From positions 124,001 to 188,000 of the IMG/VR virus record IMGVR_UViG_3300037245_001419: a DNA stretch of 64,000 bases; one strand, 5' to 3'. A program made the translations under genes and the position numbers. The notes beneath the pieces were generated by a model that searched no databases, was not told where the DNA came from, and saw nothing but the letters and a program-made list of their open reading frames with translations. Shown piece by piece: positions 10,373-62,077 of this stretch (the stretch's first letter is position 1; the number at the start of each line of letters is the position of its first letter).

Positions 10373-11400
10373 ACATTTTATACCTAGTGGACAAAAAATA
10401 TTACGACACCAAGATGTCAAGAATTCGTTTCCGAACCATGGAAGCAATCGAAGAATTATGTGATGATTCGCCAGATAATAAATTTTACTGGTATGGCCCA
10501 GGTTGGAACGGATGGGACATACTGAAGACAGCATCAGAAAACATTAAAGATGCATTTGATGGTAATTCAAATCACATAAACCTTATAGTAGCATATAAAC
10601 CTTTAGATATCTACAAGGCAGATGAACTCCATAAAGAATATAAATGCTGCTTAAATTATAATGAAATGTATGATGTTGATTGGACTAAAAAAGAGATCAA
10701 ATATTTTGGTGCGACATTAGTTATCTGTCACCACTATAACGACTGGGAAAAATTTAATCATTATCCATCATTAAATGCGATAGAGTTCCATTACATTCCA
10801 CACTCAGCAGATGAGAAAGCATTTAAGCAATGGAGCTTTGACGGTGTACAGCTACCAAAAATATATGATGTCATGTTAGTGGGTGCATATAATGTATCTA
10901 ATAAATTTGGCAACATATACCCCTTACGTGACAGGCTATCAAAGCTACTTCCAAAGATAGCACCCAAATATAGATGGGGTATATTTAACCATCCATCATA
11001 TGAAAGAGAAGACGCTAATTCAAATCAGTACGCAGAGTTTTTCAGTAAAGCTTTAAATTCTACCAGGATTGCCGTATGCGACTCTTCTATATTTAAGTAT
11101 AGATTAGGCAAGTACATTGAAGTTCCTGCAAGCGGAACTGTATTAGCAGCAGATATGCCGATGACACATCCAGTAGACCAAGAAGCCCTTAAAAATGTCA
11201 TAATCGACATAAATATGGATATGTCAGATCAAGAAATTATAGATACTATAGCAGAATACTTAGAAGACGATACTAAGTATAACCTAAAGGTAAAGAATGG
11301 ATTGGAATATGCTAAAGCATTTACATGCGAATCATACGCCACTAAATTCTTAGATATAATTACGGATTTATATGAAGATACAAATACACACCCTCAATAA
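10369..11400 (+). CDS. GT-B glycosyltransferase (CgeB/YkvP-like)
   Basis: YDVMLVG...YPLRDRL...KYIEVPASGTVL. ATG 10369 follows GAGGAG. Confidence 0.75.
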   Translation: MNILYLVDKKYYDTKMSRIRFRTMEAIEELCDDSPDNKFYWYGPGWNGWDILKTASENIKDAFDGNSNHINLIVAYKPLDIYKADELHKEYKCCLNYNEMYDVDWTKKEIKYFGATLVICHHYNDWEKFNHYPSLNAIEFHYIPHSADEKAFKQWSFDGVQLPKIYDVMLVGAYNVSNKFGNIYPLRDRLSKLLPKIAPKYRWGIFNHPSYEREDANSNQYAEFFSKALNSTRIAVCDSSIFKYRLGKYIEVPASGTVLAADMPMTHPVDQEALKNVIIDINMDMSDQEIIDTIAEYLEDDTKYNLKVKNGLEYAKAFTCESYATKFLDIITDLYEDTNTHPQ

Positions 11401-11816: not shown

Positions 11817-12686
11817 ATGAGAAGGGTAGTATTTACATCGGAAAGATCTAACATGGCGACTGCAGGTTCTTTTTACCTGCGTGCAGTCCAAGTGTACATG
11901 GCATTGCAGAGACATGGCATAAAAGCTTTTATGGAGTCCCCTGAAAAATTAGCTACACAGTCAGGAAACATTATATTCTTTATAAAACCTATTGAAAATA
12001 GCATGGAAAAGATTGAAACACTATGCGAGAATAACACAGTAATTTTAGATCCTTTAGATTTCATACCAATATTTAAAGACCTACCTCCTGGATTAGTACA
12101 TGGTTGCTTATTCAACAATAATAAAGCTAGAAATAAGTTTATTCATTTGTTTAAAAATAAAGAAATGTGTCCAGTTATCTATCATCACATAGACTTACGA
12201 TTTCGGAGCGCAACGAATCCACCAGACGAACTAAAGTTTTTATACTTAGGCACTAACTCTGAAAGAAAAGTATATGCTTACAATGAGTTCGACGATATTG
12301 ATTACAAATCAATTAATGGCAATCCTTCAGATTTTAACCAGTACACAGATCTTATAGGAAAGTACAACTGTCACTATATTGTTAACGGTTTAAAAGACGC
12401 TAAACGAAGATCATACGAGCCTTTCACAAAGTTAGCAATGGCATCTATTAATCACAGTCCCGTAATAACATATAAGAAAGATCACATTGAAATATTAGGA
12501 GAATACTATCCTTATTATATAACTAGTAAAGATATAGGTTCTGTAAAAAATATGATAAACTACATAAAAAAGACTTATAAAACTAAAGTATGGAATGATG
12601 CAGTCTCTATAATGAAAGATGCTAAAGAGAAGTTTTTACTTGGTAATACAATTCATACATATATAGATATTATAAAAAAACATTAA
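11817..12686 (+). CDS. Putative GT-B glycosyltransferase
   Basis: GSFYLRA...KP...ILDPLD...YHHID...KLAMA pattern; operon context. Confidence 0.5.
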   Translation: MRRVVFTSERSNMATAGSFYLRAVQVYMALQRHGIKAFMESPEKLATQSGNIIFFIKPIENSMEKIETLCENNTVILDPLDFIPIFKDLPPGLVHGCLFNNNKARNKFIHLFKNKEMCPVIYHHIDLRFRSATNPPDELKFLYLGTNSERKVYAYNEFDDIDYKSINGNPSDFNQYTDLIGKYNCHYIVNGLKDAKRRSYEPFTKLAMASINHSPVITYKKDHIEILGEYYPYYITSKDIGSVKNMINYIKKTYKTKVWNDAVSIMKDAKEKFLLGNTIHTYIDIIKKH

Positions 12687-18228: not shown

Positions 18229-18372
18229 ATGAAAAGTTATGGCTTATTTGACGACGACGAGAATGGTTTAGAAGACGGTATGGGAATACCAAAATACGAT
18301 AATATATTTGGTGAAGAACCGGAAGAAGAGACAGAAGAATTAGATTTTTCACACGATGATGAGAATTTATAA
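18229..18372 (+). CDS. 47-aa acidic peptide (not in the ORF track)
   Basis: GAGGT SD, then MKSYGLFDDDENGLEDGMGIPKYDNIFGEEPEEETEELDFSHDDENL. Confidence 0.55.
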   Translation: MKSYGLFDDDENGLEDGMGIPKYDNIFGEEPEEETEELDFSHDDENL

Positions 18373-18397
18373 ATAATAGAATAAAGCGGAGGGACGA

Positions 18398-18904
18398 ATG
18401 CCTTATTTTAACGAATACATAAAAACATTACTTGAGAACGATGAAAATTGTGTTTTTATCAATGAAGACGACATTCAGAATTATGATCTGTCACAAATGG
18501 ATGAGAGAATCATTAAACAGAGAGTTGTTAGAGGTGGTAAAAGAAAGTTTAAATTTCAAACGAGTAAGGCTGGATTCAAAGTTTTAGTAAACAAAGAAGG
18601 CGTACCGAAAGAAGTTTTAATTCCACCCAAAGAAAGAAAAGCAAGAGAAATTTCACAGAAACGAGCTGCAAGACTAAGAAAAGTTAAGCAAGATCCGGCA
18701 CAAGAAAAAAGAGCTGCATCAATCAAACGATCTGAGATCATCCATAAGACTTCTTCAGAAAAGAAGCAAGATGAGCTACTTAAGAAGAAAAGAGATAAAG
18801 AAAAAGAAGATAAAGAAAGACAAAAACGCTTAACAGGTGGTGGTGGTACTAAGCCAAGCGACACCAAGAGAGAATCTTTCTCAGGAGTATACTATGGGAT
18901 TTAG
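18398..18904 (+). CDS. Prohead core protein, gp68-like
   Basis: Acidic N-terminus followed by basic RVVRGGK...GFK...ERKAR...KRAAR...KRAASIKRS, resembling T4-like gp68 core proteins. Confidence 0.55.
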   Translation: MPYFNEYIKTLLENDENCVFINEDDIQNYDLSQMDERIIKQRVVRGGKRKFKFQTSKAGFKVLVNKEGVPKEVLIPPKERKAREISQKRAARLRKVKQDPAQEKRAASIKRSEIIHKTSSEKKQDELLKKKRDKEKEDKERQKRLTGGGGTKPSDTKRESFSGVYYGI

Positions 18905-25681: not shown

Positions 25682-25882
25682 ATGATTATTTGTGTTGAGT
25701 GTCACACAGAGATGAAAGTTGAGAAAAATGGTGTTGTTGTCCGCTATGGTGGAAACCACTGTTACTCAGGAGACAGTTGGAAATGCCCTACATGCGGTAA
25801 AATGGTAATCAATTGCAATAACAGCCCGTACCCTTCAGATGAACCTTTAGATCCGAAACACGATATCGAAATGAATCAATGA
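25682..25882 (+). CDS. Zinc-ribbon protein
   Basis: CVEC...CPTC. Confidence 0.7.
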   Translation: MIICVECHTEMKVEKNGVVVRYGGNHCYSGDSWKCPTCGKMVINCNNSPYPSDEPLDPKHDIEMNQ

Positions 25883-26901
25883 TAAAAATAGTAGATGACT
25901 TACTGTACATGATTCGCCAGTTGAAAGCAGTTGAATTGTCAATAGACAAGCTAGACATTATAGAGAAATATCCTCAATGTAGAAATTTATTGGAGATAAC
26001 CTATAATCCTTTTAAGCACTTCGCAGTTGGTACAAAACAGATAGATAAAGAGTTAGAATCTACTTTAGTTGATATTCCGAAAATAGATAAGCCGTACATC
26101 ATGATCCATCACTTCTACAATTTTTTAAACGATTCGTTGCTTAACAAAAGATACAGTCGTTCTGTAGGAATCAAAGCGATAAAGAGATGGTGTACAATAT
26201 TTCCCGAATATGAGACCCTTATTATCAACATTTTCAATAAGAACTTGAAGTGTGGAATAGATGCTCAGCTTATCAATTGTATCTATCCGAAACTTATACC
26301 AATGTTTAACCCTACACGACCCAAAATTTGGGATACGATGTGTCCTAAGAGGGTCTTTTCTGAGTACGTTACAATGGAGAAGGTTGAGGGCGAACTGGTC
26401 TACATGAGCATTAGAAACCGAAAGGTGAACATATATAGCAAGCACACCATACCTATTGTCACATTGAATTACCTTAAGGATGAAGTACAGTCATTTATCG
26501 ACATTACTGATATTGATAATATCATGATTGAAGGTCATGTATTCATAGGCAACCAGAGCTTTGATGAGTCTCACCAGAGCATCGTTAGAGGCAGTAAGAA
26601 GTTAACTAATATAATATTTAAAGTGTATGACATACTAACCCTCGATGAGTTCGAGGTGTATTACGACGAGTCAAAAAAATACACAGATCGACATAAGAGA
26701 TTCGCAGAGATGGGTTTCTCTAATTTAAGTATGATACAAGTCGTACCATACCAGCAGTATGATCCAAACGGTGAACACATACTATCACACATGAAAACAA
26801 CAATTTCCGATAACAATTGGAAAGGAGCAATTCTTCGTAAGAACATACCTTACGACATTAAAATTTCGTATAACATAATTAAAGTATACCCCAATTCGTA
26901 A
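25879..26901 (+). CDS. Degenerate ATP-dependent DNA ligase (T4 gp30-like), no OB domain
   Basis: N-terminal DBD-like region (YNP, NLKCGI..LIN.IYP.LIP); motif I EKVEG; IIIa VYDIL; motif IV KGAIL (E to K); stop after motif V. Confidence 0.7.
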   Translation: MIKIVDDLLYMIRQLKAVELSIDKLDIIEKYPQCRNLLEITYNPFKHFAVGTKQIDKELESTLVDIPKIDKPYIMIHHFYNFLNDSLLNKRYSRSVGIKAIKRWCTIFPEYETLIINIFNKNLKCGIDAQLINCIYPKLIPMFNPTRPKIWDTMCPKRVFSEYVTMEKVEGELVYMSIRNRKVNIYSKHTIPIVTLNYLKDEVQSFIDITDIDNIMIEGHVFIGNQSFDESHQSIVRGSKKLTNIIFKVYDILTLDEFEVYYDESKKYTDRHKRFAEMGFSNLSMIQVVPYQQYDPNGEHILSHMKTTISDNNWKGAILRKNIPYDIKISYNIIKVYPNS

Positions 26902-36246: not shown

Positions 36247-36298
36247 TTTTACTCCTTTAATTATCTATTATTAAAGTTAACTAATTAACTAAAGTATG

Positions 36299-36679
36299 TC
36301 AATAGAATTTACGTATCCCTAAAACTTTTTGTATTTCTTCTAATTTGTCATCACACCCATCAGTATAGGCTTCATTTTTTACGTTGCTCATTATAACTTT
36401 GATGCGAGGTAATAATTTCGATGGAGTTATTTTTCTCAATATAAGACGATCCAACCACTCTTGTATGGCATTAACCTTAACATTCTTATTTAACAGGCCA
36501 GTAAGGTGTTCACCTTCTTTAGTATCCTTATAGATGGTGATACCTAAATCAAGAATACAATCATCGCACCAGTAACTTTGTGAGTTTTGTGAAATAGTTG
36601 TTATCTCATGACTAACACCACCTGCCGAATTCATCTTTCTACCGTTAGGTTCACCAATTATAATATCATCCCATGACAT
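36299..36679 (-). CDS. Hypothetical protein
   Basis: ORF with GGA SD. Confidence 0.6.
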   Translation of the reverse strand: MSWDDIIIGEPNGRKMNSAGGVSHEITTISQNSQSYWCDDCILDLGITIYKDTKEGEHLTGLLNKNVKVNAIQEWLDRLILRKITPSKLLPRIKVIMSNVKNEAYTDGCDDKLEEIQKVLGIRKFY

Positions 36680-36684
36680 AATCC

Positions 36685-37764
36685 CTACTTTACTAAATAT
36701 TGTTTCTGGTTAATCTCTTCTAGCATGCCCTTACCCTTTGTGTATGGCTCGATCCACTTCATACGTCGATCAGTCATTTTAATACCACAAGCTTGACTAC
36801 GCCAATGACCTCTTACAAGCCATTTGGGACACGACACAACGTTCTTTAAGTTTGTCAGGCAACTATACTCATCATCAGTCAAACGTCTGTTAGAACCTAT
36901 TACAATGCGACCTATCTTAGACAAATCTTTGTTCTTTTCAGCTACTTTAGTTGCTTCTTTTAACCGATTAGCTTTAGTCTTTTTCTTCTTAGTAACATAT
37001 CGCTTAGCAGGGGTATGATTAAACGATTCCATTGAGCAGATATATAACAGAGAATTGATAATGAAACTATAATGCCTTCTGTATATTGTTTCGTCATCAT
37101 TAAAGTCAATGTCGGTCATTTTTTTATCTTTAGATGTTTTACGGGCTAATAATACATCGTCAAGACTTAGTTGGATCATATCTTCAACTGAAGTACAGTT
37201 AAGTCTTAATGACATTCCAGACTGTTCCAACATACGTTGATCGCCCTTTCGCCCTTCTCCGAACGATTGGGCAAGGATAGAGTTTTCAGCTTCATTGTAT
37301 GTCAATACAATGTCTTTAAAAACCATAACTAAATCACCACTAGCTTGAACCTCTAGTGAAGGGATAGACAACACCATGTTATCAAAAGGCATTTTAATTA
37401 ATTCTGGATTGATATTTTTTATCTCTGTATTAACAAGCTTAAAGAATAAGTCTTCAGTTATATTAAACACTTTTGCTTTACGCATACCCAGATATATTGA
37501 TGCAAAAGTAGATTCAAACAATGGATTGTTATGAAAAAACATATCCCCATATACTTTGATCATTGCAAAACTACAAAACAGCAAACGACTAATGTCAGTA
37601 GGGTATGATTCATTGACAAATTTGTTGCCAAACGCATCGGCCCTTTCATCTGATATTGCAGGAAGAGCTTCATCCATTTGAGCTATAATATCTATACCTT
37701 TATCCTTAAAGTATTCGCATATCTCTTCAATGTGTAAAGGTTCAAATTTCTTAGCTTCCATCAA
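36685..37764 (-). CDS. Conserved phage protein with C-terminal VRGHWR motif
   Basis: KWLVRGHWRSQACG...KWIEPYTKG. Confidence 0.7.
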   Translation of the reverse strand: MMEAKKFEPLHIEEICEYFKDKGIDIIAQMDEALPAISDERADAFGNKFVNESYPTDISRLLFCSFAMIKVYGDMFFHNNPLFESTFASIYLGMRKAKVFNITEDLFFKLVNTEIKNINPELIKMPFDNMVLSIPSLEVQASGDLVMVFKDIVLTYNEAENSILAQSFGEGRKGDQRMLEQSGMSLRLNCTSVEDMIQLSLDDVLLARKTSKDKKMTDIDFNDDETIYRRHYSFIINSLLYICSMESFNHTPAKRYVTKKKKTKANRLKEATKVAEKNKDLSKIGRIVIGSNRRLTDDEYSCLTNLKNVVSCPKWLVRGHWRSQACGIKMTDRRMKWIEPYTKGKGMLEEINQKQYLVK

Positions 37765-39414: not shown

Positions 39415-39477
39415 ATGATCTCCTTGTTATCTATTATTAAAGATAGTTAATTAACTAAGCGTTGTCAATGTAAAAGA

Positions 39478-40242
39478 TTAGATTTTCCCAGATTTATCAT
39501 ACTGAAGTTGTTTCATATCAGCAAATGCATCAGCATCTTCTTTATTGAACACAATGCCGACAACTTCATCATTAGTAGTAGTAAATTCACCAGTAAATCT
39601 TATCTCAAAATTTACATCAGTTTCTACAACATAAAAAATTGACAGATACTTTTTTTGCAATTCTTTCATGTCACAAATTTTTGAACCCTTTAGGTAAAGC
39701 CCTTCATCGTCTGGACAAACATCATGTAGTCGCTGTACCAAGCCTTCAATGATAGTTGTTTGAGATAGCTTCTTAAGGTCTGCCTTATCAAATGCAACTT
39801 CAATGTTACAACTATCACATCCGGCATCTTCTTTTCCAGAGTGGCCACCATCGGGACTATTTGGATCGTGAAGATAAATGTCAATATGAATATCTTTAGC
39901 TTTTTTAAGAATGTCTTCATCTGAAGTTCCTGTAACGTCCCATGAATGAGTAACTTGAGCTTCAGTAACTTGATAGTATACTGTTTTTGTAAACTTCCTT
40001 GGCGTAGGGGTATGGGTCTCTTGCTCACCTACCAAGCCCCACTCTTCTGATTCTCTGATAGCAGACCATGTAGAATAGCTGTTCTTAAAGTGGTTCGTGA
40101 TAACAGCATCATCTAAACACTTGTCGCACAGATCAACAGTTTCATTTGTTTCTTGAATTAGAGTGCCGTGTATACTGCCTTCGTGTGATTCTAAATCTAC
40201 ACCAGTGTTTTGTAGGTCGTTTAAGTGTTTACAAATTCTCAT
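39478..40242 (-). CDS. Hypothetical protein
   Basis: Own promoter; GGAG SD. Confidence 0.65.
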   Translation of the reverse strand: MRICKHLNDLQNTGVDLESHEGSIHGTLIQETNETVDLCDKCLDDAVITNHFKNSYSTWSAIRESEEWGLVGEQETHTPTPRKFTKTVYYQVTEAQVTHSWDVTGTSDEDILKKAKDIHIDIYLHDPNSPDGGHSGKEDAGCDSCNIEVAFDKADLKKLSQTTIIEGLVQRLHDVCPDDEGLYLKGSKICDMKELQKKYLSIFYVVETDVNFEIRFTGEFTTTNDEVVGIVFNKEDADAFADMKQLQYDKSGKI

Positions 40243-41999: not shown

Positions 42000-42386
42000 C
42001 TATTTAGCCTTCCTTAATTCGTCACACTTTTCCCAACAAACACTTTCAGTCACATCTTTAATAACTTCAAATGCTTCATTCAATTTATCTAATGCGTCAT
42101 AGTATTTTTCATTAAACTTATCCATAGGGGCGTTTACTTTAGTTGATAGAATCGCTTCTGCTCTTCTGTCAGCAGTGGTATCCATTTGATTCCATAATTC
42201 GTCGAAAAAGAATTTAGGATTAACATCAATACCATCAATCTGCATGGTAATATCATATGACTTGTTGGATTTATTTTTGTCTAACCATTCACCGTTAAGT
42301 TCTTTAAGCATACCAACAGCTTGTAAAAAGAAGTGACCCATAAGCTCTTTATTGTTGTGCAATAGTTCTTCTCTATCAAATTTCAT
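42000..42386 (-). CDS. Hypothetical protein
   Basis: TAATG-coupled to the cca gene. Confidence 0.6.
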   Translation of the reverse strand: MKFDREELLHNNKELMGHFFLQAVGMLKELNGEWLDKNKSNKSYDITMQIDGIDVNPKFFFDELWNQMDTTADRRAEAILSTKVNAPMDKFNEKYYDALDKLNEAFEVIKDVTESVCWEKCDELRKAK

Positions 42387-43753
42387 TACGCCTCCAAACT
42401 AAAGTTTTTTATGTAGTCTCTGATTGCATCCATGTTGTCAAGGTCAACCATGTTGTCGTATATCCATTGCTTAGTACCTTTAATGATAACCCCAAGCTCT
42501 TTACAGGGTTTATCAATACCAGTAATTTCCATTACAAGCTTACCAGATACAAGTTTATCAACAGGCATATTGTTACGGTTAACAGGGTCGTTATACTTCT
42601 TAATAACAAAGTTAACATACTCCATCTTATTATCCCATGCCGATTGAGGAGATAGCTGTTCACCCCTGCACATTTCATCACAAAACGCAACCTTTACTAG
42701 TGCATCCCAGTTCACATTGTCAGTGAGAGTAATCAGCTTTGATACTCTCATTCCCTTCAGTCTATGGAATTTCATATGATTAACACAAGGGTAAACTAAA
42801 GTAGCCCTAGTCTTATTATCGATTTTAAGGCGGTCACAGATGGCGTTAACAATAGCCTCCCCTGCACCCTCATGGCAGTGATAAGTGTTCTTACCGTCCT
42901 TTACAACGTGCGTAAGAGCCTTTCCTACATCGTGTAATAGTATAGCCATGTTGATAACAGGATTTTCTTCTTTATTAACAGCTAAAGCACTCATAGTATG
43001 CAACCATGCGTTTGCACCTTCTGGATGTGAACTTAAATCATGGGGAAATTGATCTAATATGTCAACTTCTGGTAAGATATACTTCAGTAGGTTAGAAGTT
43101 TTCAATAACTCTAATGCATATGCAAAGCGTTCGCCAGTCTGTTCAGCCATTTTAAACAGCTCTTTTGCGATACGTTCTTGAGCTACTTTAGTTATGTTGT
43201 GGGCGAGTTCTTGAATGGCTTCCATTGTATCATTTTCGATTACAAAATCCATTCTACTTGCAAATCGAATAGCTCTTAACATTCTTAAATAGTCTTCAGC
43301 AAACCGCTCTTTAGGGTCTCCAACAGTTCTAATAATTTGATTTTTAATATCACATTTACCATTATGATAATCAATTACACCATAGTCTTTTCTTAAACCC
43401 ATAGAATTAATAGTAAAATCTCTTCTTTTAGTATCCTCTTCAAAGGTTACACCCAGTACTACATTGTCCGGTCTTCTACCATCAGAATATTCACCATCAG
43501 TTCTGAATTGAGCAACCTCAAAGTGATCGTCTTTATATTCTACAACAACAATACCAAAGACTTTGTTCTTACCAATATCATGAGTGGGGAATAACGATTC
43601 TATCTTATCCATGGGAACATTGGTTGCAATATCAATATCAGATGCAATTCTATTCATCAATGAATCTCTAACAGCACCACCAACAATATAAGCTTCCCCA
43701 TACTCTGATAGAAGTTTTATTATTTCCATTCCTTTAGATAATGCATTACTCAT
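42386..43753 (-). CDS. cca: CCA tRNA nucleotidyltransferase with HD domain
   Basis: YIVGGAVRD, DIDIAT, EVAQFR.D, EDTKRRDFTINSM, FAEDYLRMLRAIRFA, ERIAKEL, LLHDVGK. Confidence 0.93.
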   Translation of the reverse strand: MSNALSKGMEIIKLLSEYGEAYIVGGAVRDSLMNRIASDIDIATNVPMDKIESLFPTHDIGKNKVFGIVVVEYKDDHFEVAQFRTDGEYSDGRRPDNVVLGVTFEEDTKRRDFTINSMGLRKDYGVIDYHNGKCDIKNQIIRTVGDPKERFAEDYLRMLRAIRFASRMDFVIENDTMEAIQELAHNITKVAQERIAKELFKMAEQTGERFAYALELLKTSNLLKYILPEVDILDQFPHDLSSHPEGANAWLHTMSALAVNKEENPVINMAILLHDVGKALTHVVKDGKNTYHCHEGAGEAIVNAICDRLKIDNKTRATLVYPCVNHMKFHRLKGMRVSKLITLTDNVNWDALVKVAFCDEMCRGEQLSPQSAWDNKMEYVNFVIKKYNDPVNRNNMPVDKLVSGKLVMEITGIDKPCKELGVIIKGTKQWIYDNMVDLDNMDAIRDYIKNFSLEA

Positions 43754-44030: not shown

Positions 44031-44117
44031 TTTATTCCTTCTATATGATTACATTATTAAAGTTAGTTAATTAAATAAGTTATGTCAATATAAAACTGAA
44101 GTATTTGGCGAATTGAT

Positions 44118-44753
44118 CTAATAAGATTTTTTTATTTTTTTCAACTTATAGCGTCCTTCGATATTTTTTGGAAAATTTGCGAAGTAATTTAATAAAACTT
44201 TTTGACTGGAATTATTCCATATTTTCTTATCTATGCCTATTTTACCTTCCCAAGCCTTATATGAATTAGAAACTCTATTTACTGGATACATATCTAACCA
44301 AACATGTTTTGTATTGATAATACGTTCGTATGGAACATAAGAAGTTGTTTTTGTAGTTGTCTTATAATTTTTATTTTTATAGATTGATACATCAACTTCA
44401 CCTAATTTTGTCTGGTTGGGAGTATTCAATTTACCCTTAGTTGTACTGTAGTTAGTTACGGGTCTAACTCCTGTTTGTTTTGTAGTTGATTCGCTTGTAC
44501 TAACAAACATAAGATAATCAGCCTTTAAGGTTTTAGTATATACTTGAAACCCTAAACCATTCATTGCTTCGTATACATCATAAACCAAATTTCTGTCTTC
44601 AATACTACTATTATCCAAAGTAACAATTAGGATTTTAGAATCTTGGTTAATAGATATAGATTTGTCCGATCGGCCTAAAAAATATGCAGATTTTGTTTTA
44701 TGGTGAGTACAGTTCATTAATAACAATGTGAGTAGTAATAATAGAATTTTCAT
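44118..44753 (-). CDS. Lipoprotein (DUF4136-like fold possible)
   Basis: MKILLLLLTLLLMNC signal; ADYLMFV...WEGKI. Confidence 0.65.
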   Translation of the reverse strand: MKILLLLLTLLLMNCTHHKTKSAYFLGRSDKSISINQDSKILIVTLDNSSIEDRNLVYDVYEAMNGLGFQVYTKTLKADYLMFVSTSESTTKQTGVRPVTNYSTTKGKLNTPNQTKLGEVDVSIYKNKNYKTTTKTTSYVPYERIINTKHVWLDMYPVNRVSNSYKAWEGKIGIDKKIWNNSSQKVLLNYFANFPKNIEGRYKLKKIKKSY

Positions 44754-44756
44754 AAT

Positions 44757-45542
44757 TTAGTTCTCCTTGTTAAAAGAAATATGTTGGCACGGATATACTT
44801 TAGTTTCATCGGATGAGCTATAGTAGTATAAACTCCCTATGACAACAATGCTATCGAATTGTGATATTGCAGATATACTAGCATACAGATGATGATCACT
44901 AAGGTCGTAAGTACTATAATCTCTTGTTCTATCGAACTCCATTAGTTCACCGTCTAGATAGCGGATATAGTCGTCGTATATTGTTAACGGGTGCTTAAGG
45001 AGTAAATAAGATTCATCACCAATAAAAGCTTCAACTAAAGTATCTGGTAAAAACATCAGTTCCTTATTTTCTAGTTCACCTTTTACAGAGTGAAAATAAT
45101 ATTTCAAAACAGAATCACCAATAAGCATAGCAACATCATATTCTGTTGTAGAATCGTATTCGTCGCTGTACACTGTAAGGCTAAAGAATGTTGTATCACC
45201 AAACGTTGTATCAAATACCATATTCCCTAGACTAAGTGTTGTATCAATAGTGAATCCTTCAGATTTGTGATGTATGCTAGTGTAATTTGCATAGTCTGTT
45301 GAGTCATCTGCATTCCAATATCTAGGGTTATTATCTAGACCAAATTCGACAGGATAAAAGCCGATAGAATCGGATATTACCAGTTCCCAATTATGTTTTA
45401 CTGTACCGTCTACAATTTCTGATTCTGAACAGTAGCCATGTATAATAGGGTCTTGTTTAGGCTTAGATGAATATGTTATTTTGTCGGAGCACCCAACTAA
45501 AGTAATCGACAACACTAGTAGTGTCATAATACATAATTTCAT
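44757..45542 (-). CDS. Lipoprotein
   Basis: MKLCIMTLLVLSITLVGC lipobox. Confidence 0.7.
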   Translation of the reverse strand: MKLCIMTLLVLSITLVGCSDKITYSSKPKQDPIIHGYCSESEIVDGTVKHNWELVISDSIGFYPVEFGLDNNPRYWNADDSTDYANYTSIHHKSEGFTIDTTLSLGNMVFDTTFGDTTFFSLTVYSDEYDSTTEYDVAMLIGDSVLKYYFHSVKGELENKELMFLPDTLVEAFIGDESYLLLKHPLTIYDDYIRYLDGELMEFDRTRDYSTYDLSDHHLYASISAISQFDSIVVIGSLYYYSSSDETKVYPCQHISFNKEN

Positions 45543-45543
45543 A

Positions 45544-45849
45544 TTACCAAGAACTTTTTGCTAATATACGAGAAGAACTTTGATTGACAATTGATACTAC
45601 AATTGAAGAACCTACTCGTTTCACATAAACATCCTTAATCAAATTTGCCATATCTTCAAGTTCTTCTTTAGATGAATCGTATTGAGAACTTGATAGCTGA
45701 ACCCACAGAGAATTATTTCCAGCATAATAACACTCTATAACTGGCGAGTTTGATATTATATAATCTCCAAATTCTTTCTGTGTTGATGAAGGTGTGTATG
45801 CATACGTCATAGAGACTAAACATATGGTAATAAATATTATTTTTAACAT
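45544..45849 (-). CDS. Secreted/periplasmic protein
   Basis: Sec signal MLKIIFITICLVSMTYA. Confidence 0.6.
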   Translation of the reverse strand: MLKIIFITICLVSMTYAYTPSSTQKEFGDYIISNSPVIECYYAGNNSLWVQLSSSQYDSSKEELEDMANLIKDVYVKRVGSSIVVSIVNQSSSRILAKSSW

Positions 45850-45947
45850 GGTATATCCTTTTTGTTACTAAATTTAATTAATTATACATAAATTGTCTAT
45901 AAAAACTGAAGTACCCTCTCAAATACTTCAGTTTTGCTGTCTGCAAT

Positions 45948-46253
45948 TTACTTTTCAACACCAAAAACTAAATCACCACCATCGAATAATCTAGGTAGGT
46001 TGTGGGTTTCATCGATCAGAAAATTTGAATCGTCTCTAATGTCAATAGCATAAACTTCTTGTTTATCCCATCGATCTCTTACAAACACATTAGATACAAT
46101 ATGAAAAGATTCGTCAGATTCAACAGTTATACAAACTGCATTAGAATCTGAAGAACATTGTTCACAACTTTGTTGACTGTGAGGCTTAGCACCTCCACAA
46201 TTTCTAGCTTCACTGCAATTTCTTCTCATAGCACAAATAACTTCATCACTCAT
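45948..46253 (-). CDS. Cys-rich hypothetical protein
   Basis: Six Cys in the N-terminal 41 aa. Confidence 0.6.
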   Translation of the reverse strand: MSDEVICAMRRNCSEARNCGGAKPHSQQSCEQCSSDSNAVCITVESDESFHIVSNVFVRDRWDKQEVYAIDIRDDSNFLIDETHNLPRLFDGGDLVFGVEK

Positions 46254-46340
46254 AGATTCTCCGTTTGATTATATAACTAATATAGCTAAATAGATAAGTT
46301 ACGTCAACAGTTTTTGTGTAAGTTCTGTTATTTGTTACTT

Positions 46341-46370
46341 AAAAAAATACCCCCTCCGTCGAGGGGGATT
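46341..46370 (-). terminator. Intrinsic terminator after the tRNA-like gene
   Basis: Minus strand: ATCCCCCTC-GACG-GAGGGGGTAT-TTTTTTT. Confidence 0.85.
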
Positions 46371-46372
46371 AT

Positions 46373-46494
46373 TCAATTAGATGGGATTCAAACCCATACA
46401 TTCCCACACTATAGACCTTTGCCAAAGATAACCCTTTGTAGTCAATAATGTGTTGGCTCTAAACCAGATACGCTATCAGTTGCGCCACTAATTA
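46373..46494 (-). tRNA. tRNA-like gene (anticodon UAG, Leu) interrupted by a ~49-nt hairpin insert; no encoded CCA
   Basis: Acceptor TAATTAG/CTAATTG + A73; D arm GCGC-AACTGATA-GCGT; anticodon arm TCTGG-TTTAGAG-CCA[insert]GG; T arm ATGGG-TTTGAAT-CCCAT. Confidence 0.7.
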
Positions 46495-47124
46495 AATATC
46501 AAAACCATAATCCCATTTAGCTTTCTGCTCTGCTATCCATTCAGATAAAGAAAAGTCAAGTTCTTTATCCTCATCTTTATTTACTGGTCTCTCAAACGCC
46601 TTCAGCTTTACCATAAGCTTTCTAAGGTCTTCAGATACACCACCAAACCAATCTTTTGCTTGATTTATATCACCATCTTTAAATGACTTCTCAACACCTT
46701 CCATACACTTACGCAAATAAGAAAAAGAATGTATGAACTCTTGCATCACTTCACCCTTATGGGTTTTCGGGTGTGCAGACTCAACCACTTGACCATATTG
46801 TGCACCATAAGTAAGAATGCTACCAACTAAAGTTTCAATAGGCTTTCTACCTTGATCTACATCACTGAAAGCAACGTGATCTTTTTGTAAATTAACAGGT
46901 AGTGGGTAAGAATAAGATAGACCACCGTTGTGACCTTTAAACTCATCCATAAGACCTTTTTCATCAACCTTGTCACATTCAAATTCGTCATGATTTTTAA
47001 CCGCTTCAGCATACCCTTTAGGCTCTACAGAGATATCCCAGTACTTCTTTAGATACTCTAGTATTGCTTCAGCATGGAATTCAAAATTCTTTACTTTAGT
47101 TTCTTTTGATATGTCATAAGCCAT
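46492..47124 (-). CDS. Hypothetical protein
   Basis: 210 aa ORF whose TAA overlaps nt 1-3 of the tRNA-like element. Confidence 0.65.
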   Translation of the reverse strand: MAYDISKETKVKNFEFHAEAILEYLKKYWDISVEPKGYAEAVKNHDEFECDKVDEKGLMDEFKGHNGGLSYSYPLPVNLQKDHVAFSDVDQGRKPIETLVGSILTYGAQYGQVVESAHPKTHKGEVMQEFIHSFSYLRKCMEGVEKSFKDGDINQAKDWFGGVSEDLRKLMVKLKAFERPVNKDEDKELDFSLSEWIAEQKAKWDYGFDI

Positions 47125-47327
47125 TATAAATCCTCATTTAATTCAAGGTACTCAACTTCTCTGTAGTTCCAATACCATGTACGTTCAGCAGATAGTTGTC
47201 TGCTTAACCATAAAGTCAAGTCTCTTTCAGATTCTTCCAATAATTCGGGATCGTCACTCATTCCGGCACGACCTATAGCACTAAGCACGTTAAAGCGTAC
47301 TTTTTTAGTGATACGTCTTTTAGCCAT
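47124..47327 (-). CDS. Hypothetical protein
   Basis: TAATG coupling at both ends. Confidence 0.55.
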   Translation of the reverse strand: MAKRRITKKVRFNVLSAIGRAGMSDDPELLEESERDLTLWLSRQLSAERTWYWNYREVEYLELNEDL

Positions 47328-47632: not shown

Positions 47633-47697
47633 ATTATTCTCCGAGTGCTTATCTATTATTAAAGATAGTTAATTAACTAACCTTTGTCAAGTGTTTT

Positions 47698-49528: not shown

Positions 49529-49654
49529 GGTTAACTCCTTATTGTATCTATTATTAAAGATAGCTTATTAACTAAAGTATGTCAACGAAAAAAACTGAAG
49601 TATAAAAGAAAAATGGGTAAGATTCCTAATATACTTCAGTCTGCATTGGAGTGT

Positions 49655-50098: not shown

Positions 50099-50157
50099 TT
50101 TAATTACTCCACTTGTTATCTATTATTAAAGATAGTTAATTAGCTAATCACTGTCAA

Positions 50158-50809
50158 CTAAAAAGATATACATTTTGAAAATTTTGTTTCATCGACAATA
50201 TTCATCACTATGAAAACATTTACATCGTCAAATGAAGGGCTTAAGCGAACACAACCATTGCTAACGTCAAGTGTTCTGTTTTCAAAGTCAATAGATAACA
50301 CTATACAACGTTGTGGGTCGGGCGTTCGGTTTTTAAACTCACATTCGTAAGGTATTTGTAAGTGGCCGTACAGCCTTGTGAGATTGGCCTTGTTTATGTA
50401 TGGTTTATCCATGTTTCCACCATCCGCTATAATCCTGCTCTTCACCATCAACTAAAACTGAAGTATGCAATTCACCTTCAGTATAACCGTGTTGAATCAT
50501 TTGGTTTGCACGTTCAACAGCTTGTGTTCTAAAATGGTCTGCATGTTCTTTTAACACACAACACTCAACATCAAACCAATTATATGAAACCTTACCTTGC
50601 ATTGTACAATTCATGTGTTAATCCTTAATTAGCTTATCTTGCATTTTTCCACAACGTGAACACGTTCTACGTTGTCTTAGTTCTTCACCTTTATAAGTCT
50701 TACCTCTCATTTCTTTTGGGGCTAAAATTCCCCCTATGAATGAATAAGACTCAATGTATTGTTTCCATTTACTCCACTGGTGAAATAATATACACACAAA
50801 ATACTCCAT
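50158..50809 (-). CDS. Three small early ORFs (50158-50410, 50405-50614, 50618-50809)
   Basis: Coupled ORFs under the promoter at 50830; 50618 has a C..FHQW...C.RC zinc-ribbon pattern. Confidence 0.5.
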
Positions 50810-53446: not shown

Positions 53447-53671
53447 AAGTTTATTTACTCCTTATCTTACCTATTATTAAAGATAGCTTATTAACTAAAG
53501 TATGTCAACCATTTTTCTTTAAACCAGAATAAAAACTTTCCTATTTGTTTTCCTATTTCCCACCATATAACACAATACACACAAAAAACCACAATACATA
53601 TTATACCAAATGGTATATAGATAACGCACATACCTAAGAATTCTAGTAAACTTAAATCGCTCAACATACAA

Positions 53672-54374
53672 TTACCAAAAGAAAGGTATTACAATAGGTG
53701 CTTTAGCTTGTGACCAATCAATAGTACGTCTATTACCTACAAAGATACCCATTGATATACCCCATATACCCATTACAGGCAAATGAAAATATAAGAAGTT
53801 TTCGTGCAACGGTATACCTGCTTTCCAACAAATAAACATACCTATATGCATGCCAATTACAAAAAACGTTAAACAAATCATTTTTAACATATAACACTTC
53901 CTTTTAATACAATTAAATTTGCACTCAATGTATTTCGCTTCTCTTCAACTTGTTGTCTTGTTAGGTTATTACTATTCAAGTCATTAATTATCCATAGAGT
54001 ATTAAAATACATATCCCATACATCTGGTGATAAATTACAAGCCTTCATATTTCGCACTTCAATAGAATCGTTATAAGCTTTTACATTACTAATAGTTTTG
54101 GTTACACTATTGTACATAAATATCATGAACACCATGAACGCAACTAACAACACACCTACAATATATTCACCCATTAGTTAACCTCTTCATATACTTTAGT
54201 TAAAATCTTATCAACATACCGCTCTATGTTAGTTTCATCAACCCCTATTATGTTTAGTGATTTGACAGTGTTGTATTTGAGTATGTAGTGTCGAGTGTCT
54301 TTTTTACGTATCTTTGCAAATTTTAAATGCTCAATACGTTCTCTTACTACACATAACCCATTATATCCAACCAT
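53672..54374 (-). CDS. Three small ORFs, two of them membrane proteins (53672-53890, 53884-54174, 54174-54374)
   Basis: Hydrophobic segments; coupled under the promoter at 54407. Confidence 0.5.
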
Positions 54375-54417
54375 GTTTAACTCCTTACCTTACCTATTAT
54401 TAAACATAGCTAATTAA

Positions 54418-54615
54418 CTAAGCATTGTCAACAGAAAAAGTGATAGTTTTACAAATAGTACATATTGCTCTACCATTACCGCCCATTTCTTGAGAATGAC
54501 TTTTTGGGCACGTACACATATTAAGTGCATCCTGTTCTAGTTTTCTAGATTTTGCATTAAGCTTGTGAGCTTCATTTATCATTGCAGTAACTTTTTTAAT
54601 ATCTGATTGTCTCAT
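54418..54615 (-). CDS. Zinc-binding protein, paralogue of the C-terminus of 58028-58417
   Basis: A.KL....R..E..A..MCTCP...IC..C. Confidence 0.7.
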   Translation of the reverse strand: MRQSDIKKVTAMINEAHKLNAKSRKLEQDALNMCTCPKSHSQEMGGNGRAICTICKTITFSVDNA

Positions 54616-55229: not shown

Positions 55230-55336
55230 TTGGCACTCCTACCGTTATCTATTAATAAATATAGCTTATTAGCTAATCATTGTCAACAAAAAAGAGGTAC
55301 ACTAATTAATTTTAGTGTACCTCTTTTCGGTCGGAG

Positions 55337-58027: not shown

Positions 58028-59028
58028 TTATTGTGATTTGTGACATACTAAACAAATATTATGACCTTCAATATAGATAAAACGTCTAGGGGGACACGTA
58101 CACATTTTTCTAGCTTCCGCTTCCATCTCTCTAGCTTGTTTAATTAGCTTTTGTGCAGTAACAAACATCCCTTTAATTTTATTAGCTTTATCGTCTGTCA
58201 TTTCACGTTTAAGCCATACTTCAGTTTGATTCTCTATTATGTCAATAACAGATAAACGTATACCCATACTATCATCATCAACCGTTACACTGTCAACATC
58301 TTGTCTATCAACATCTAACTCTAAGTTAAGATCATTATATACTTCTCTTAAGTGCATAGCTAAATCATGTTTGGCTATATCGGGGTAGTTTAACGGTAAT
58401 ACTATAGTTAAATTCATTCGTTGCTCCTACCGTTTAATCTGCAAAATTTGCTGTTATGGTATTACATTCAATATCGATTGTGATTTCAGTAAAGCCTAAA
58501 CCTTTAACATAGCCTTGATAAGTAGGTTTTTCTTTAAACTTTTCTACCGCTTCTTTACAAGTTTTACGTTGTTCAGTTGAGCACAAATATTCACCGTTCT
58601 TAAAGATGTTTATTTTTCTAGCCATTATTTACTCCAATTCTTAACCTGTATTAAAGATAGTTAATTAACTAAGCACTGTCAACAATAAAAGGTTTAAATT
58701 CACAAATATATTCTTTTTTAACCTCTTCAACTAAAGTCAAAAGCTCATTACTAAAGTAAGTACTATCATTTTGAGCCATTGAGTCAAGTGCCTTGACAAA
58801 TGTCAAAATAATTTGATCTTTGGTTGTGATACTTTTTCCAACTTCTAAAATACTTGTCTTAGTAGCAAGCAATAAATCTAAAACAGTGCTCTCCAGATTC
58901 TTACTGATAATATCATTAATATTAATATCGTCATACTTTTCAGAAAATCTTAGTATACAAGATATACCACTAATAGAATTGCTAATATGTGAACCACAAT
59001 TAGAGTCACTGATTGAACCAATATTCAT
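58028..59028 (-). CDS. Three early ORFs (58028-58417, 58434-58625, 58669-59028)
   Basis: Promoter/SD elements; 58028 ends in a MCTCP...CLVC zinc domain. Confidence 0.6.
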
Positions 59029-60125: not shown

Positions 60126-60235
60126 GTTTGGCGCTCCTACCGTTATCTATTATTAAATATAGTTAATTAACTAACCCTTGTCAACAAAAAAAGAGATACA
60201 CCAAAATTAATTAGTGCACCTCTTTTCGGTCGGAG

Positions 60236-61964: not shown

Positions 61965-62077
61965 GTTTGGCACTCCTACCGTTATCTATTAATAAATATA
62001 GCTAATTAACTAAGTACTGTCAACAAAAAAACTGAAGTATACCAAATAAATTCAATATACTTCAGTTTGGGTCGGAG

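What the first reader, a model, noticed from the sequence alone, without database searches (positions are those of the whole stretch)
46373..46494. tRNA gene interrupted by a 49-nt self-folding hairpin inside the anticodon stem, with a compensatory elbow pair
Seen (minus strand): 7-bp acceptor stem with A73, and D and T arms. The universal G19:C56 elbow pair is replaced by A19:U56, a double change, and A15:U48 is kept. After C39-C40-A41 comes ACACATTATTGAC...GTCTATAGTGTG. It folds on itself (CACAUUAU/AUAGUGUG, then GAC/GUC, then an inner CAAAGG/UCUUUG hairpin). Deleting exactly these 49 nt restores a full anticodon stem (UCUGG/CCAGG), a 5-nt variable loop and a 73-nt tRNA. The anticodon is UAG (Leu) yet the variable loop is short, unlike class II tRNA-Leu. 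No CCA is encoded, a strong terminator follows, and a CCA-adding enzyme lies 2.6 kb downstream. The insert is too short for group I/II and does not form a canonical bulge-helix-bulge. Inference: either a novel small tRNA intron at position 41/42 or a tRNA-mimic ncRNA (decoy for anticodon nucleases or tRNA-sensing defences).
Basis: partly seen in the sequence, partly recalled or inferred. Interest (0 to 1): 0.8.

Follow-up and report, generated by a model that had tools for sequence, protein, structure and literature searches.

The report
Phage tRNA gene with extra hairpin arm
A 249-kb marine-sediment phage carries a leucine-type tRNA gene interrupted by a 49-base hairpin; it is one of at least six over-long tRNA-like genes in a genome that also encodes the RNA ligase RtcB, Tpt1 and a CCA-adding enzyme, so it may mark an unknown way of processing or using tRNAs in a bacterial virus.

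Summary
On the minus strand, 46494..46373 is a 122-nt tRNA-like gene (Rfam tRNA 32.3 bits, above threshold). It has intact acceptor, D and T arms, an A19:U56 elbow, anticodon UAG, A73 and no CCA. A self-folding 49-nt hairpin splits the 3' strand of the anticodon stem. Removing it gives a tRNA that ARAGORN accepts.

Walking about 55% of the phage genome changed the picture. The gene is not a one-off. At least five more elongated tRNA-like genes (111-157 nt) and one normal tRNA-Trp lie elsewhere. So do RtcB, Tpt1/KptA and the CCA-adding enzyme.

Only the flagged gene can be turned into a canonical tRNA by one clean excision. The five siblings have no intact anticodon hairpin. No bulge-helix-bulge motif, group I core, ribozyme family, insert-less allele, distant homologue or RNA data was found.

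I lean (0.45) to a retained extra arm: a tRNA-Leu-derived RNA trimmed by RNase P and RNase Z and given CCA. The main rival (0.33) is a new protein-dependent intron sealed by the phage RtcB. The case is unresolved without RNA data.

The parts
46373..46494 (-). tRNA-like gene t1 (122 nt), tRNA-Leu-type D arm, anticodon UAG, A73, no CCA
   Evidence: Rfam RF00005 at 32.3 bits. Found by my structural scan with 0 hits in shuffles. MFE fold is a cloverleaf plus hairpin.
46454..46494 (-). 5' segment, nt 1-41: acceptor 5' strand, D arm, anticodon stem 5' strand, loop UUUAGAG, C39-A41
   Evidence: Sequence reading. ARAGORN cloverleaf after deletion.
46405..46453 (-). 49-nt self-folding hairpin (8 bp, U-U mismatch, 4 bp, asymmetric loop, 6 bp, GUUA loop) branching between nt 41 and 42
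   Evidence: Fold of -15.4 kcal/mol, z=-3.8. Coordinates. No other copy in the window.
46373..46404 (-). 3' segment: G42 G43, variable loop AAUGU, T arm with U56, acceptor 3' strand, A73
46340..46367 (-). intrinsic terminator 5 nt after A73
   Evidence: Terminator scan: 7-bp stem with 6 G-C pairs, followed by a T run.
46492..47124 (-). upstream 210-aa orphan ORF whose stop codon TAA is nt 1-3 of the tRNA-like gene
   Evidence: no homologue; no structural lead.
47662..47690 (-). sigma-70-type promoter of a conserved phage family; drives the 101-aa, 67-aa and 210-aa ORFs and the tRNA-like gene as one unit
   Evidence: Alignment A4 of 14 copies shows an invariant TTGACA, a 17-nt spacer, TATCTT and a conserved leader.
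42386..43753 (-). class II CCA-adding enzyme (tRNA nucleotidyltransferase), 2.6 kb downstream
   Evidence: Pfam PolyA_pol 5.3e-30 plus PolyA_pol_RNAbd. PHROG 2244, 4.2e-76.

Best explanation
The element is a real, expressed tRNA-derived gene of the tRNA-Leu lineage in a roughly 249-kb T4-like jumbo phage of a bacterium. The 49-nt hairpin is most likely kept in the mature RNA as an extra helical arm.

**Shown**
- The gene is the last element of a transcription unit driven by a sigma-70-type promoter.
- A strong terminator follows it.
- Its acceptor, D and T arms are intact and the elbow pair is compensated.
- It encodes no CCA.
- The hairpin forms a near-perfect three-way junction with the two halves of the anticodon stem.
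- Five sibling genes share the same plan.

**Inferred**
- RNase P cuts at nt 1. This also removes the stop codon of the upstream ORF from that transcript.
- RNase Z or exonucleases trim after A73, and the phage CCA-adding enzyme adds CCA.
- The result is a 125-nt tRNA-like RNA. Its conserved top half can engage tRNA-handling proteins, possibly including LeuRS, which does not read the anticodon.
- The bottom half carries the extra arm, either as a non-decoding tRNA mimic or scaffold, or less likely as a decoding tRNA with a displaced giant variable arm.
For: - **It is one of a family.** At least six elongated tRNA-like genes occur in one genome: t1 (122 nt); t2 L038:3406-3537 (132 nt, Rfam 35.7 bits); t3 to t6 at L040:10488-10644, 11033-11143, 12563-12680 and 18368-18515. 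All have canonical acceptor, D and T arms, and none encodes CCA.
- **The siblings cannot be spliced cleanly.** In t2 to t6 no single excision restores a canonical anticodon arm, and no intact anticodon hairpin exists. For them the extra sequence cannot be a simple intron.
- **The folds look alike.** The MFE folds of t1, t2, t3 and t6 show acceptor, D and T stems around large central hairpins. t5 shows acceptor-closed hairpins without a T arm, and t4 does not fold as a cloverleaf.
- **The D arms of t1, t4, t5 and t6 look like tRNA-Leu D arms**. tRNA-Leu normally carries a long extra arm.
- **No known intron signal.** There is no BHB motif beyond chance level, no group I or ribozyme family, and no insert-less DNA allele in two metagenomes.
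- **RNA-level selection is hinted.** The hairpin has 3 G-U pairs and no A-C pair, which fits pairing of the sense RNA.
- **Expression context** is a promoter family plus a terminator.
- **There is a precedent.** T4 rnaC is a stable phage RNA with a tRNA-like T arm and acceptor plus long hairpins.
Against: - t1, unlike its siblings, keeps a textbook anticodon loop (U33, purine 37) and the two G residues that complete a 5-bp stem. One exact excision yields a flawless class I tRNA. That is what an intron would look like.
- The genome encodes RtcB and Tpt1, enzymes of tRNA splicing elsewhere in life.
- No RNA data exist.
- There is no covariation, because all three strain variants are identical.
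- The function of such an RNA is not identified.
Confidence: 0.45

Rival explanations
1. The hairpin is a true intervening sequence of a new kind. An unidentified phage or host endonuclease cuts at the base of the hairpin and leaves 2',3'-cyclic phosphate and 5'-OH ends. The phage RtcB joins the halves and the phage CCA-adding enzyme completes a 76-nt tRNA that reads CUA and CUG. The sibling genes would carry several or irregular introns.
For: - Exact 49-nt removal gives a canonical tRNA that ARAGORN accepts. The body is pristine and the elbow pair compensated.
- RtcB (Pfam 1.4e-92), Tpt1 (3.8e-47) and the CCA-adding enzyme are in the same genome. A canonical tRNA-Trp sits between Tpt1 and RtcB.
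- ARAGORN in intron mode at its default threshold calls t2 to t6 as intron-bearing tRNAs.
- CUA is 16% of Leu codons in the phage.
- A related phage has a class-I-shaped tRNA with a Leu anticodon.
- Lak megaphage tRNA genes carry unexplained 79-93-nt intervening sequences (PMC6784885).
Against: - No BHB motif.
- No splicing endonuclease or Archease among the proteins near RtcB, or in the Pfam calls listed for the fetched loci (about 137 kb).
- The ARAGORN solutions for t3, t5 and t6 have poor stems or a pyrimidine at position 37.
- No single excision works for t2 to t6.
- Phage RtcB is usually read as tRNA repair (my own knowledge). Related phages with RtcB carry only normal tRNAs beside it.
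- Protein-dependent tRNA splicing is unknown in bacteria (established knowledge).
Confidence: 0.33
2. It is a recently disrupted tRNA gene: a palindromic sequence was inserted into a working tRNA-Leu-type gene, and the product has no function.
For: - Any insertion, once deleted, restores the gene, so exact restoration by itself proves nothing.
- The gene lies in a variable island that is absent from the nearest different phage. One X2 contig may lack the 1002-bp block that contains it.
- There are no homologues in any collection.
Against: - Six such genes in one genome argue against accident.
- Every stem and conserved base of the tRNA body is intact.
- The insert is not a repeat.
- G-U pairs rather than mismatches occur in the hairpin.
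- It has its own terminator.
Confidence: 0.1
3. It is a cis-acting 3' element of the upstream mRNA. The tRNA-like fold recruits RNase P, which cuts exactly at the stop codon of the 210-aa ORF and so controls that message. The RNA itself is a by-product.
For: - The stop codon TAA is nt 1-3 of the tRNA-like gene.
- ORF and tRNA-like gene form one block that is absent from the relative.
- t2 also sits 6 nt after an ORF.
Against: - A full D arm, anticodon loop and compensated elbow are more than an RNase P signal needs.
- t3 to t6 lie in intergenic gaps with no such overlap.
Confidence: 0.07

Closest known systems
'Enigmatic introns' in tRNA genes of Lak megaphages (Devoto et al. 2019, PMC6784885)
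   Same: Huge-phage tRNA genes that are too long. The extra sequence lies in the anticodon arm, has no group I features and no Rfam family, is identical among strains, and has no known mechanism. t5 here, like the Lak inserts, contains a T-arm-like hairpin.
   Different: Lak inserts are 79-93 nt at the canonical 37/38 site and affect 1-4 of about 30 tRNAs, and insert-less alleles exist. Here the insert is 49 nt, a single hairpin inside the stem at 41/42. Six of the seven tRNA-type genes found are elongated, and no insert-less allele was found.
Phage T4 stable RNAs species 1 and 2 (rnaC, rnaD)
   Same: Phage-encoded RNAs of about 120-140 nt lying among tRNA genes. rnaC has a canonical T arm and an acceptor-like stem plus long hairpins. 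Their function is still unknown (my own knowledge).
   Different: No sequence similarity. T4 rnaC scores only 17.5 bits, against tRNA-Sec, whereas t1 has all four arms and an anticodon loop.
Archaeal and eukaryal tRNA introns (BHB motif, EndA, RtcB)
   Same: A short protein-dependent type of intron, sometimes at non-canonical positions. RtcB is the ligase, and an RtcB gene is present here.
   Different: No BHB motif, no EndA found, and the host is bacterial by promoter, terminator and enzyme types.
Long variable arm of class II tRNAs (Leu, Ser, Tyr)
   Same: An extra helix on the same side of the molecule. The D arm looks Leu-like and the anticodon is a Leu anticodon.
   Different: The arm leaves the stem between 41 and 42, not between 45 and 46. 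It is 49 nt instead of roughly 13-21. Seven nucleotides, not about one to three as in typical class II tRNAs (my own knowledge), follow it before the T stem.
Bacterial tRNA group I introns
   Same: An intervening sequence in a tRNA-Leu-type gene of a bacterial system.
   Different: Group I introns are over 200 nt, sit in the anticodon loop and have a conserved core. None of this applies.

Membership tests
tRNA (Rfam RF00005) | Cloverleaf with acceptor, D and T arms and conserved tertiary bases, scoring above the curated threshold | tested here: met
   32.3 bits against a gathering score of 29. U8, A14, G18, A21, U33, G53, U54, U55, A58 and C61 are present.
tRNA (Rfam RF00005) | Uninterrupted 5-bp anticodon stem | tested here: not met
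   A 53-nt block is unaligned. ARAGORN at default finds nothing. Only 3 contiguous bp flank the loop.
tRNA (Rfam RF00005) | Mature 3' CCA and aminoacylation | not testable with these tools
   CCA is not encoded. A CCA-adding enzyme is present. No RNA runs were found.
BHB-type tRNA intron | Two 3-nt bulges separated by a 4-bp helix at the splice sites | tested here: not met
   My script finds only relaxed matches at chance frequency: 153 in 122 nt, and none strict at the junctions. The same holds for t2.
BHB-type tRNA intron | Splicing endonuclease (EndA family) available | tested here: inconclusive
   None among the strongest 25 of 38 Pfam families hit by 104 window ORFs, the listed Pfam calls of the fetched loci, or the RtcB neighbours. 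About 112 kb of the genome was not seen.
BHB-type tRNA intron | RtcB-type ligase available | tested here: met
   L041:12296-13399(-), Pfam RtcB 1.4e-92.
Group I intron in tRNA | Over 200 nt with a P3-P9 core, located in the anticodon loop | tested here: not met
   49 nt, located in the stem, with no Rfam match even at E<=10.
Small self-cleaving ribozymes | Match to a known ribozyme family | tested here: not met
   No Rfam hit at E<=10 in 46200-46700.
Class II tRNA variable arm | Arm inserted between positions 45 and 46, about 1-3 nt before the T stem | tested here: not met
   The arm lies between 41 and 42. GG plus AAUGU follow it.
Lak-type phage tRNA intervening sequence | Non-group-I insert in a huge-phage tRNA gene with no Rfam family | tested here: met
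   (249-kb contig). Compare.
Lak-type phage tRNA intervening sequence | Insert at 37/38, and alleles without it | tested here: not met
   The position is 41/42. No 49-nt-skipping contig in runs X1 or X2.
Mobile palindromic repeat | Further copies in the genome or elsewhere | tested here: not met
   No copy in the window. One unrelated IMG/VR hairpin with the same outer stem, at about the chance expectation.

The most novel reading that the evidence does not exclude
A bacterial virus runs a protein-dependent tRNA splicing pathway of its own. Hairpin-shaped or irregular intervening sequences without a BHB motif interrupt most of its tRNA genes. An unidentified endonuclease cuts them out, the phage RtcB joins the exons (with Tpt1 cleaning up any 2'-phosphate junctions), and the phage CCA-adding enzyme finishes the tRNAs. 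The phage tRNAs would then work only when the phage's own enzymes are present.
Probability: 0.3. Interest if true: 0.9.

Novelty: new variant of a known kind. Interest (0 to 1): 0.62.

Why it matters
Bacteria and their viruses are thought to lack protein-dependent tRNA splicing, and the only accepted tRNA introns there are self-splicing group I introns. Here a phage carries one canonical tRNA and at least six over-long tRNA-type genes, together with RtcB, Tpt1 and a CCA-adding enzyme.

That combination fits either of two outcomes:
- The first such splicing pathway in a bacterial system.
- A family of tRNA-shaped RNAs with new arms, an expanded version of the unexplained T4 species 1 and 2 RNAs.

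Either way it gives the 'enigmatic introns' of Lak megaphages a second, better-equipped test case. The flagged gene is the cleanest substrate for that test, because it has one hairpin, exact boundaries and a defined product.

Tried and rejected
**Homologues of the tRNA-like gene.** None were found beyond three near-identical strains.
- Phage GenBank collection by blastn.
- IMG/VR pattern scans.
- One metagenome scan and one GTDB genome scan with a D-loop plus anticodon-loop pattern. All extra hits were chance matches with no tRNA fold.
- So covariation could not be tested.

**The insert as a repeat.** No second copy in the window. One IMG/VR hairpin with the same outer stem (L016) lies in an unrelated contig, at about the chance expectation of 0.3.

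**RNA evidence.** No RNA run was listed.

**An insert-less allele.** Not seen in the contigs of two DNA runs.

**Neighbouring proteins.** The 210-aa upstream ORF and the other island ORFs have no Pfam, PHROG, NCBIfam or PADLOC family and no homologues.

**Shared motif between the t1 and t2 inserts.** The CACAU...UUGNC resemblance is not significant: the alignment scores below the shuffle mean.

**An endonuclease or Archease beside RtcB and Tpt1.** Nothing found.

**A second ligase.** The 340-aa ligase-like ORF at 25879..26901 matches only a PHROG DNA ligase family. It has no Pfam or PDB match and was not pursued.

**My own covariance model.** Built from 15 phage tRNAs, it is weaker than Rfam's and missed t1, t2 and t3.

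Full report
**1. What is at the coordinates**

Read on the minus strand, 46494..46373 is a 122-nt sequence with a 7-bp acceptor stem (UAAUUAG/CUAAUUG, U1-G72 wobble) and U8. The D arm is GCGC-AACUGAUA-GCGU. A 5' anticodon strand UCUGG is followed by the loop UUUAGAG and then CCA.

Next comes a 49-nt block, then GG, a 5-nt variable loop AAUGU, the T arm AUGGG-UUUGAAU-CCCAU, the 3' acceptor strand and A73.

Rfam's tRNA model matches the whole stretch end to end at 32.3 bits (threshold 29; E=0.0074 for the window) and skips 53 nt where the 3' anticodon strand should be. ARAGORN finds no tRNA in the window. It calls tRNA-Leu(tag) once 40-51 nt are deleted, and the exact 49-nt deletion gives a clean 73-nt cloverleaf.

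The 49-mer folds alone to -15.4 kcal/mol (z=-3.8). It has 8 bp, a U-U mismatch, 4 bp, an asymmetric loop, 6 bp and a GUUA loop. It contains three G-U pairs and no A-C pair, so pairing is kept in the sense RNA only.

A19 and U56 replace the usual G19-C56. A15 and U48, G18 and U55, and U54 and A58 are in place. No CCA is encoded, and a strong terminator starts 5 nt after A73. The only caveat is that excision one base to the left also restores a stem.

**2. Genome and expression context**

The window is part of a phage genome from marine sediment. It is held as contigs of 211,777 and 248,963 bp. Two of the fetched pieces (L034, L035) carry genes from both ends of the long contig, so the genome is circular or circularly permuted.

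The host is bacterial. The evidence:
- a class II CCA-adding enzyme;
- a T4 RegA-type translational repressor domain (Pfam PF01818, which I know as the T4 RegA family) and a gp25-type baseplate protein;
- hairpin-plus-T terminators;
- a family of at least 14 near-identical promoters with an invariant TTGACA, a 17-nt spacer and TATCTT.

One such promoter at about 47690 heads the unit made of a 101-aa ORF, a 67-aa ORF, a 210-aa ORF and the tRNA-like gene, ending at the terminator. The stop codon of the 210-aa ORF is nt 1-3 of the tRNA-like gene. The CCA-adding enzyme lies 2.6 kb downstream.

**3. Comparative evidence for this gene**

Three strain-level variants carry an identical gene. The flanks are 98.6-99.8% identical, so this says nothing about selection.

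The nearest different phage has a CCA enzyme 55% identical and is syntenic. It has no tRNA near that enzyme. The 210-aa ORF, the tRNA-like gene and four more ORFs form an island that this relative lacks.

Pattern scans of IMG/VR, the metagenome collection and the GTDB genomes gave only self hits and chance matches. No RNA run holds the sequence. The contigs of two DNA runs show no allele lacking the 49 nt. One contig may lack a 1002-bp block that includes the gene, but only 30 nt support one side of that joint.

**4. The rest of the genome changes the picture**

I walked the 249-kb contig with the contig look-ups and covered about 137 kb.

Rfam found a second over-long tRNA match, t2 (L038:3406-3537, 132 nt, 35.7 bits). 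My structural scan and ARAGORN in intron mode then found four more:
- t3, L040:10488-10644, 157 nt
- t4, L040:11033-11143, 111 nt
- t5, L040:12563-12680, 118 nt
- t6, L040:18368-18515, 148 nt

They also found one ordinary tRNA-Trp(CCA) of 77 nt at L041:11296-11372(-). The strict scan gives no hit in 20 shuffles of the window. A small covariance model of my own independently scores t5 at 28.4 bits and t4 at 16.9 bits.

t3 to t6 sit in intergenic gaps and t2 lies 6 nt after an ORF. All five have canonical acceptor, D and T arms, and none encodes CCA.

The tRNA-Trp lies between a Tpt1/KptA RNA 2'-phosphotransferase gene (Pfam 3.8e-47) and an RtcB RNA ligase gene (Pfam 1.4e-92). So the phage has RtcB, Tpt1 and a CCA-adding enzyme, and six of its seven detected tRNA-type genes are 111-157 nt long.

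**5. Intron or arm?**

For an intron:
- t1 becomes a flawless tRNA after one exact excision.
- The ligase that seals tRNA exons in archaea and animals is present.
- CUA makes up 16% of the phage's Leu codons.
- A related phage has a short-variable-loop tRNA with a Leu anticodon.

Against an intron:
- Neither t1 nor t2 has a BHB motif beyond chance level.
- Nothing matches a group I intron or a ribozyme family.
- No EndA-type nuclease or Archease was found.
- For t2 to t6, no single excision yields a canonical anticodon arm and no intact anticodon hairpin exists.
- ARAGORN's intron solutions for t3, t5 and t6 use arbitrary parts of longer helices or put a pyrimidine at position 37.

Predicted folds of t1, t2, t3 and t6 show one common plan. 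The acceptor, D and T arms are kept, and the region between the D and T arms is built out into one or two long hairpins. t5 fits this only in part and t4 not at all.

The D arms of t1, t4, t5 and t6 look like the tRNA-Leu pattern, that is, the tRNA class that already carries a long extra arm.

In t1 the junction has linkers of 0, 1 and 0 nt. By the usual rules for three-way junctions (established knowledge, not tested here), this should leave the two parts of the anticodon stem stacked and the hairpin pointing sideways.

The most economical single explanation for the family is therefore tRNA-derived RNAs with added arms, matured by RNase P, RNase Z and the CCA-adding enzyme. RtcB and Tpt1 would serve tRNA repair, as is usually assumed for phages (my own knowledge). 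Related phages with RtcB 55-78% identical carry only normal tRNAs next to it.

I give the retained-arm reading 0.45 and splicing 0.33. A dead gene gets 0.10, because six such genes with intact bodies argue against accident. A purely cis-acting RNase P signal for the upstream mRNA gets 0.07.

**6. Comparison with what is known**

The closest report is the 'enigmatic introns' of Lak megaphage tRNA genes. Those are 79-93 nt, sit at 37/38, have no Rfam family, are identical among strains and have no known mechanism.

The closest functional analogue is the pair of stable T4 RNAs, species 1 and 2. rnaC has a canonical T arm and acceptor plus long hairpins.

The element is not a member of the BHB, group I, ribozyme, class II variable-arm or repeat-element classes, because defining features were tested and not met.

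**7. Verdict**

It is a new variant of a poorly understood phenomenon, and a decisive RNA-level test is now well defined. What the 49-nt hairpin does remains unresolved.

Noticed in passing
L038:3406-3537; L040:10488-10644, 11033-11143, 12563-12680, 18368-18515; L041:11296-11372(-): Five further elongated tRNA-like genes (111-157 nt, no CCA, canonical acceptor, D and T arms) and one normal tRNA-Trp in the same phage genome, outside the window.
   Followed up: yes
L041:12296-13399(-) and L041:10001-10555(+): RtcB RNA ligase and Tpt1/KptA RNA 2'-phosphotransferase genes lie 1.7 kb apart and flank the tRNA-Trp. NUDIX, radical SAM, a CoaE-cytidylyltransferase fusion and NAD-dependent DNA ligase genes are nearby.
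   Followed up: partly
L038:7524-7994: A 470-nt non-coding stretch starts with a promoter-like TTGACA. It ends in a multi-hairpin RNA with a canonical T arm (ACAGG-UUCGAGU-CCUGU) and a 6-bp acceptor-like stem. It is possibly a seventh, more degenerate tRNA-like RNA and fell below the Rfam threshold.
   Followed up: partly
window, e.g. 47662-47690, 53454-53509, 60143-60200, 39423-39486, 50112-50176, 58625-58700, 55244-55301, 54371-54440, 36248-36302, 49531-49585, 61982-62031 (all minus strand): A family of at least 14 near-identical promoters, each in front of small minus-strand ORFs. Each has TTGACA, a 17-nt spacer, TATCTT, and then a conserved leader TAATAATAGATAA before the ribosome-binding site.
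   Followed up: partly
window 44103-45858: A 1.75-kb block (ORFs of 101, 261 and 211 aa, no known family) is absent from the strain contig IMGVR_UViG_3300043171_000184. In the 249-kb contig it is replaced by ORFs of 256 and 199 aa.
   Followed up: partly
window 46318-47319: One contig of DNA run X2 skips this 1002-bp block (most of the 67-aa ORF, the 210-aa ORF, the tRNA-like gene and the terminator). Only 30 nt support the shorter side, so it may be an artefact or another phage.
   Followed up: no
window 36685-37764(-); several window ORFs: An AcrVA2-like protein gene is present. Elsewhere in the window are a T4 RegA-type translational repressor domain, NADAR, nucleoside 2-deoxyribosyltransferase-like, cpYpsA/SLOG and NUMOD4 domains, and a cluster of sugar epimerase and glycosyltransferase genes.
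   Followed up: no
window 25879-26901(+): A 340-aa ORF matches only the PHROG family 'ATP-dependent DNA ligase' (1.9e-20), with no Pfam or PDB sequence match. Because the genome also has an NAD-dependent DNA ligase and Tpt1, this ORF could be an RNA ligase.
   Followed up: partly
L047:11490-11567: A related phage (RtcB 57% identical) encodes a 78-nt tRNA with anticodon UAA (Leu). It has a 4-nt variable loop and an encoded CCA, so it is a class-I-shaped tRNA with a Leu anticodon.
   Followed up: partly
L015:2322-2408 and 4108-4196 (IMGVR_UViG_3300023223_000669): An unrelated 183-kb phage, found through a chance pattern hit, has tRNA-Cys and tRNA-Asn genes of 87 and 89 nt with long, paired variable arms. 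That is unusual for these isotypes.
   Followed up: no
window 45948-46253(-): The 101-aa ORF just downstream of the terminator has a weak match (E=0.0023, 17.5 bits, far below the cut-off) to the ADP-ribosyltransferase subunit ArtA. This is probably not meaningful.
   Followed up: no
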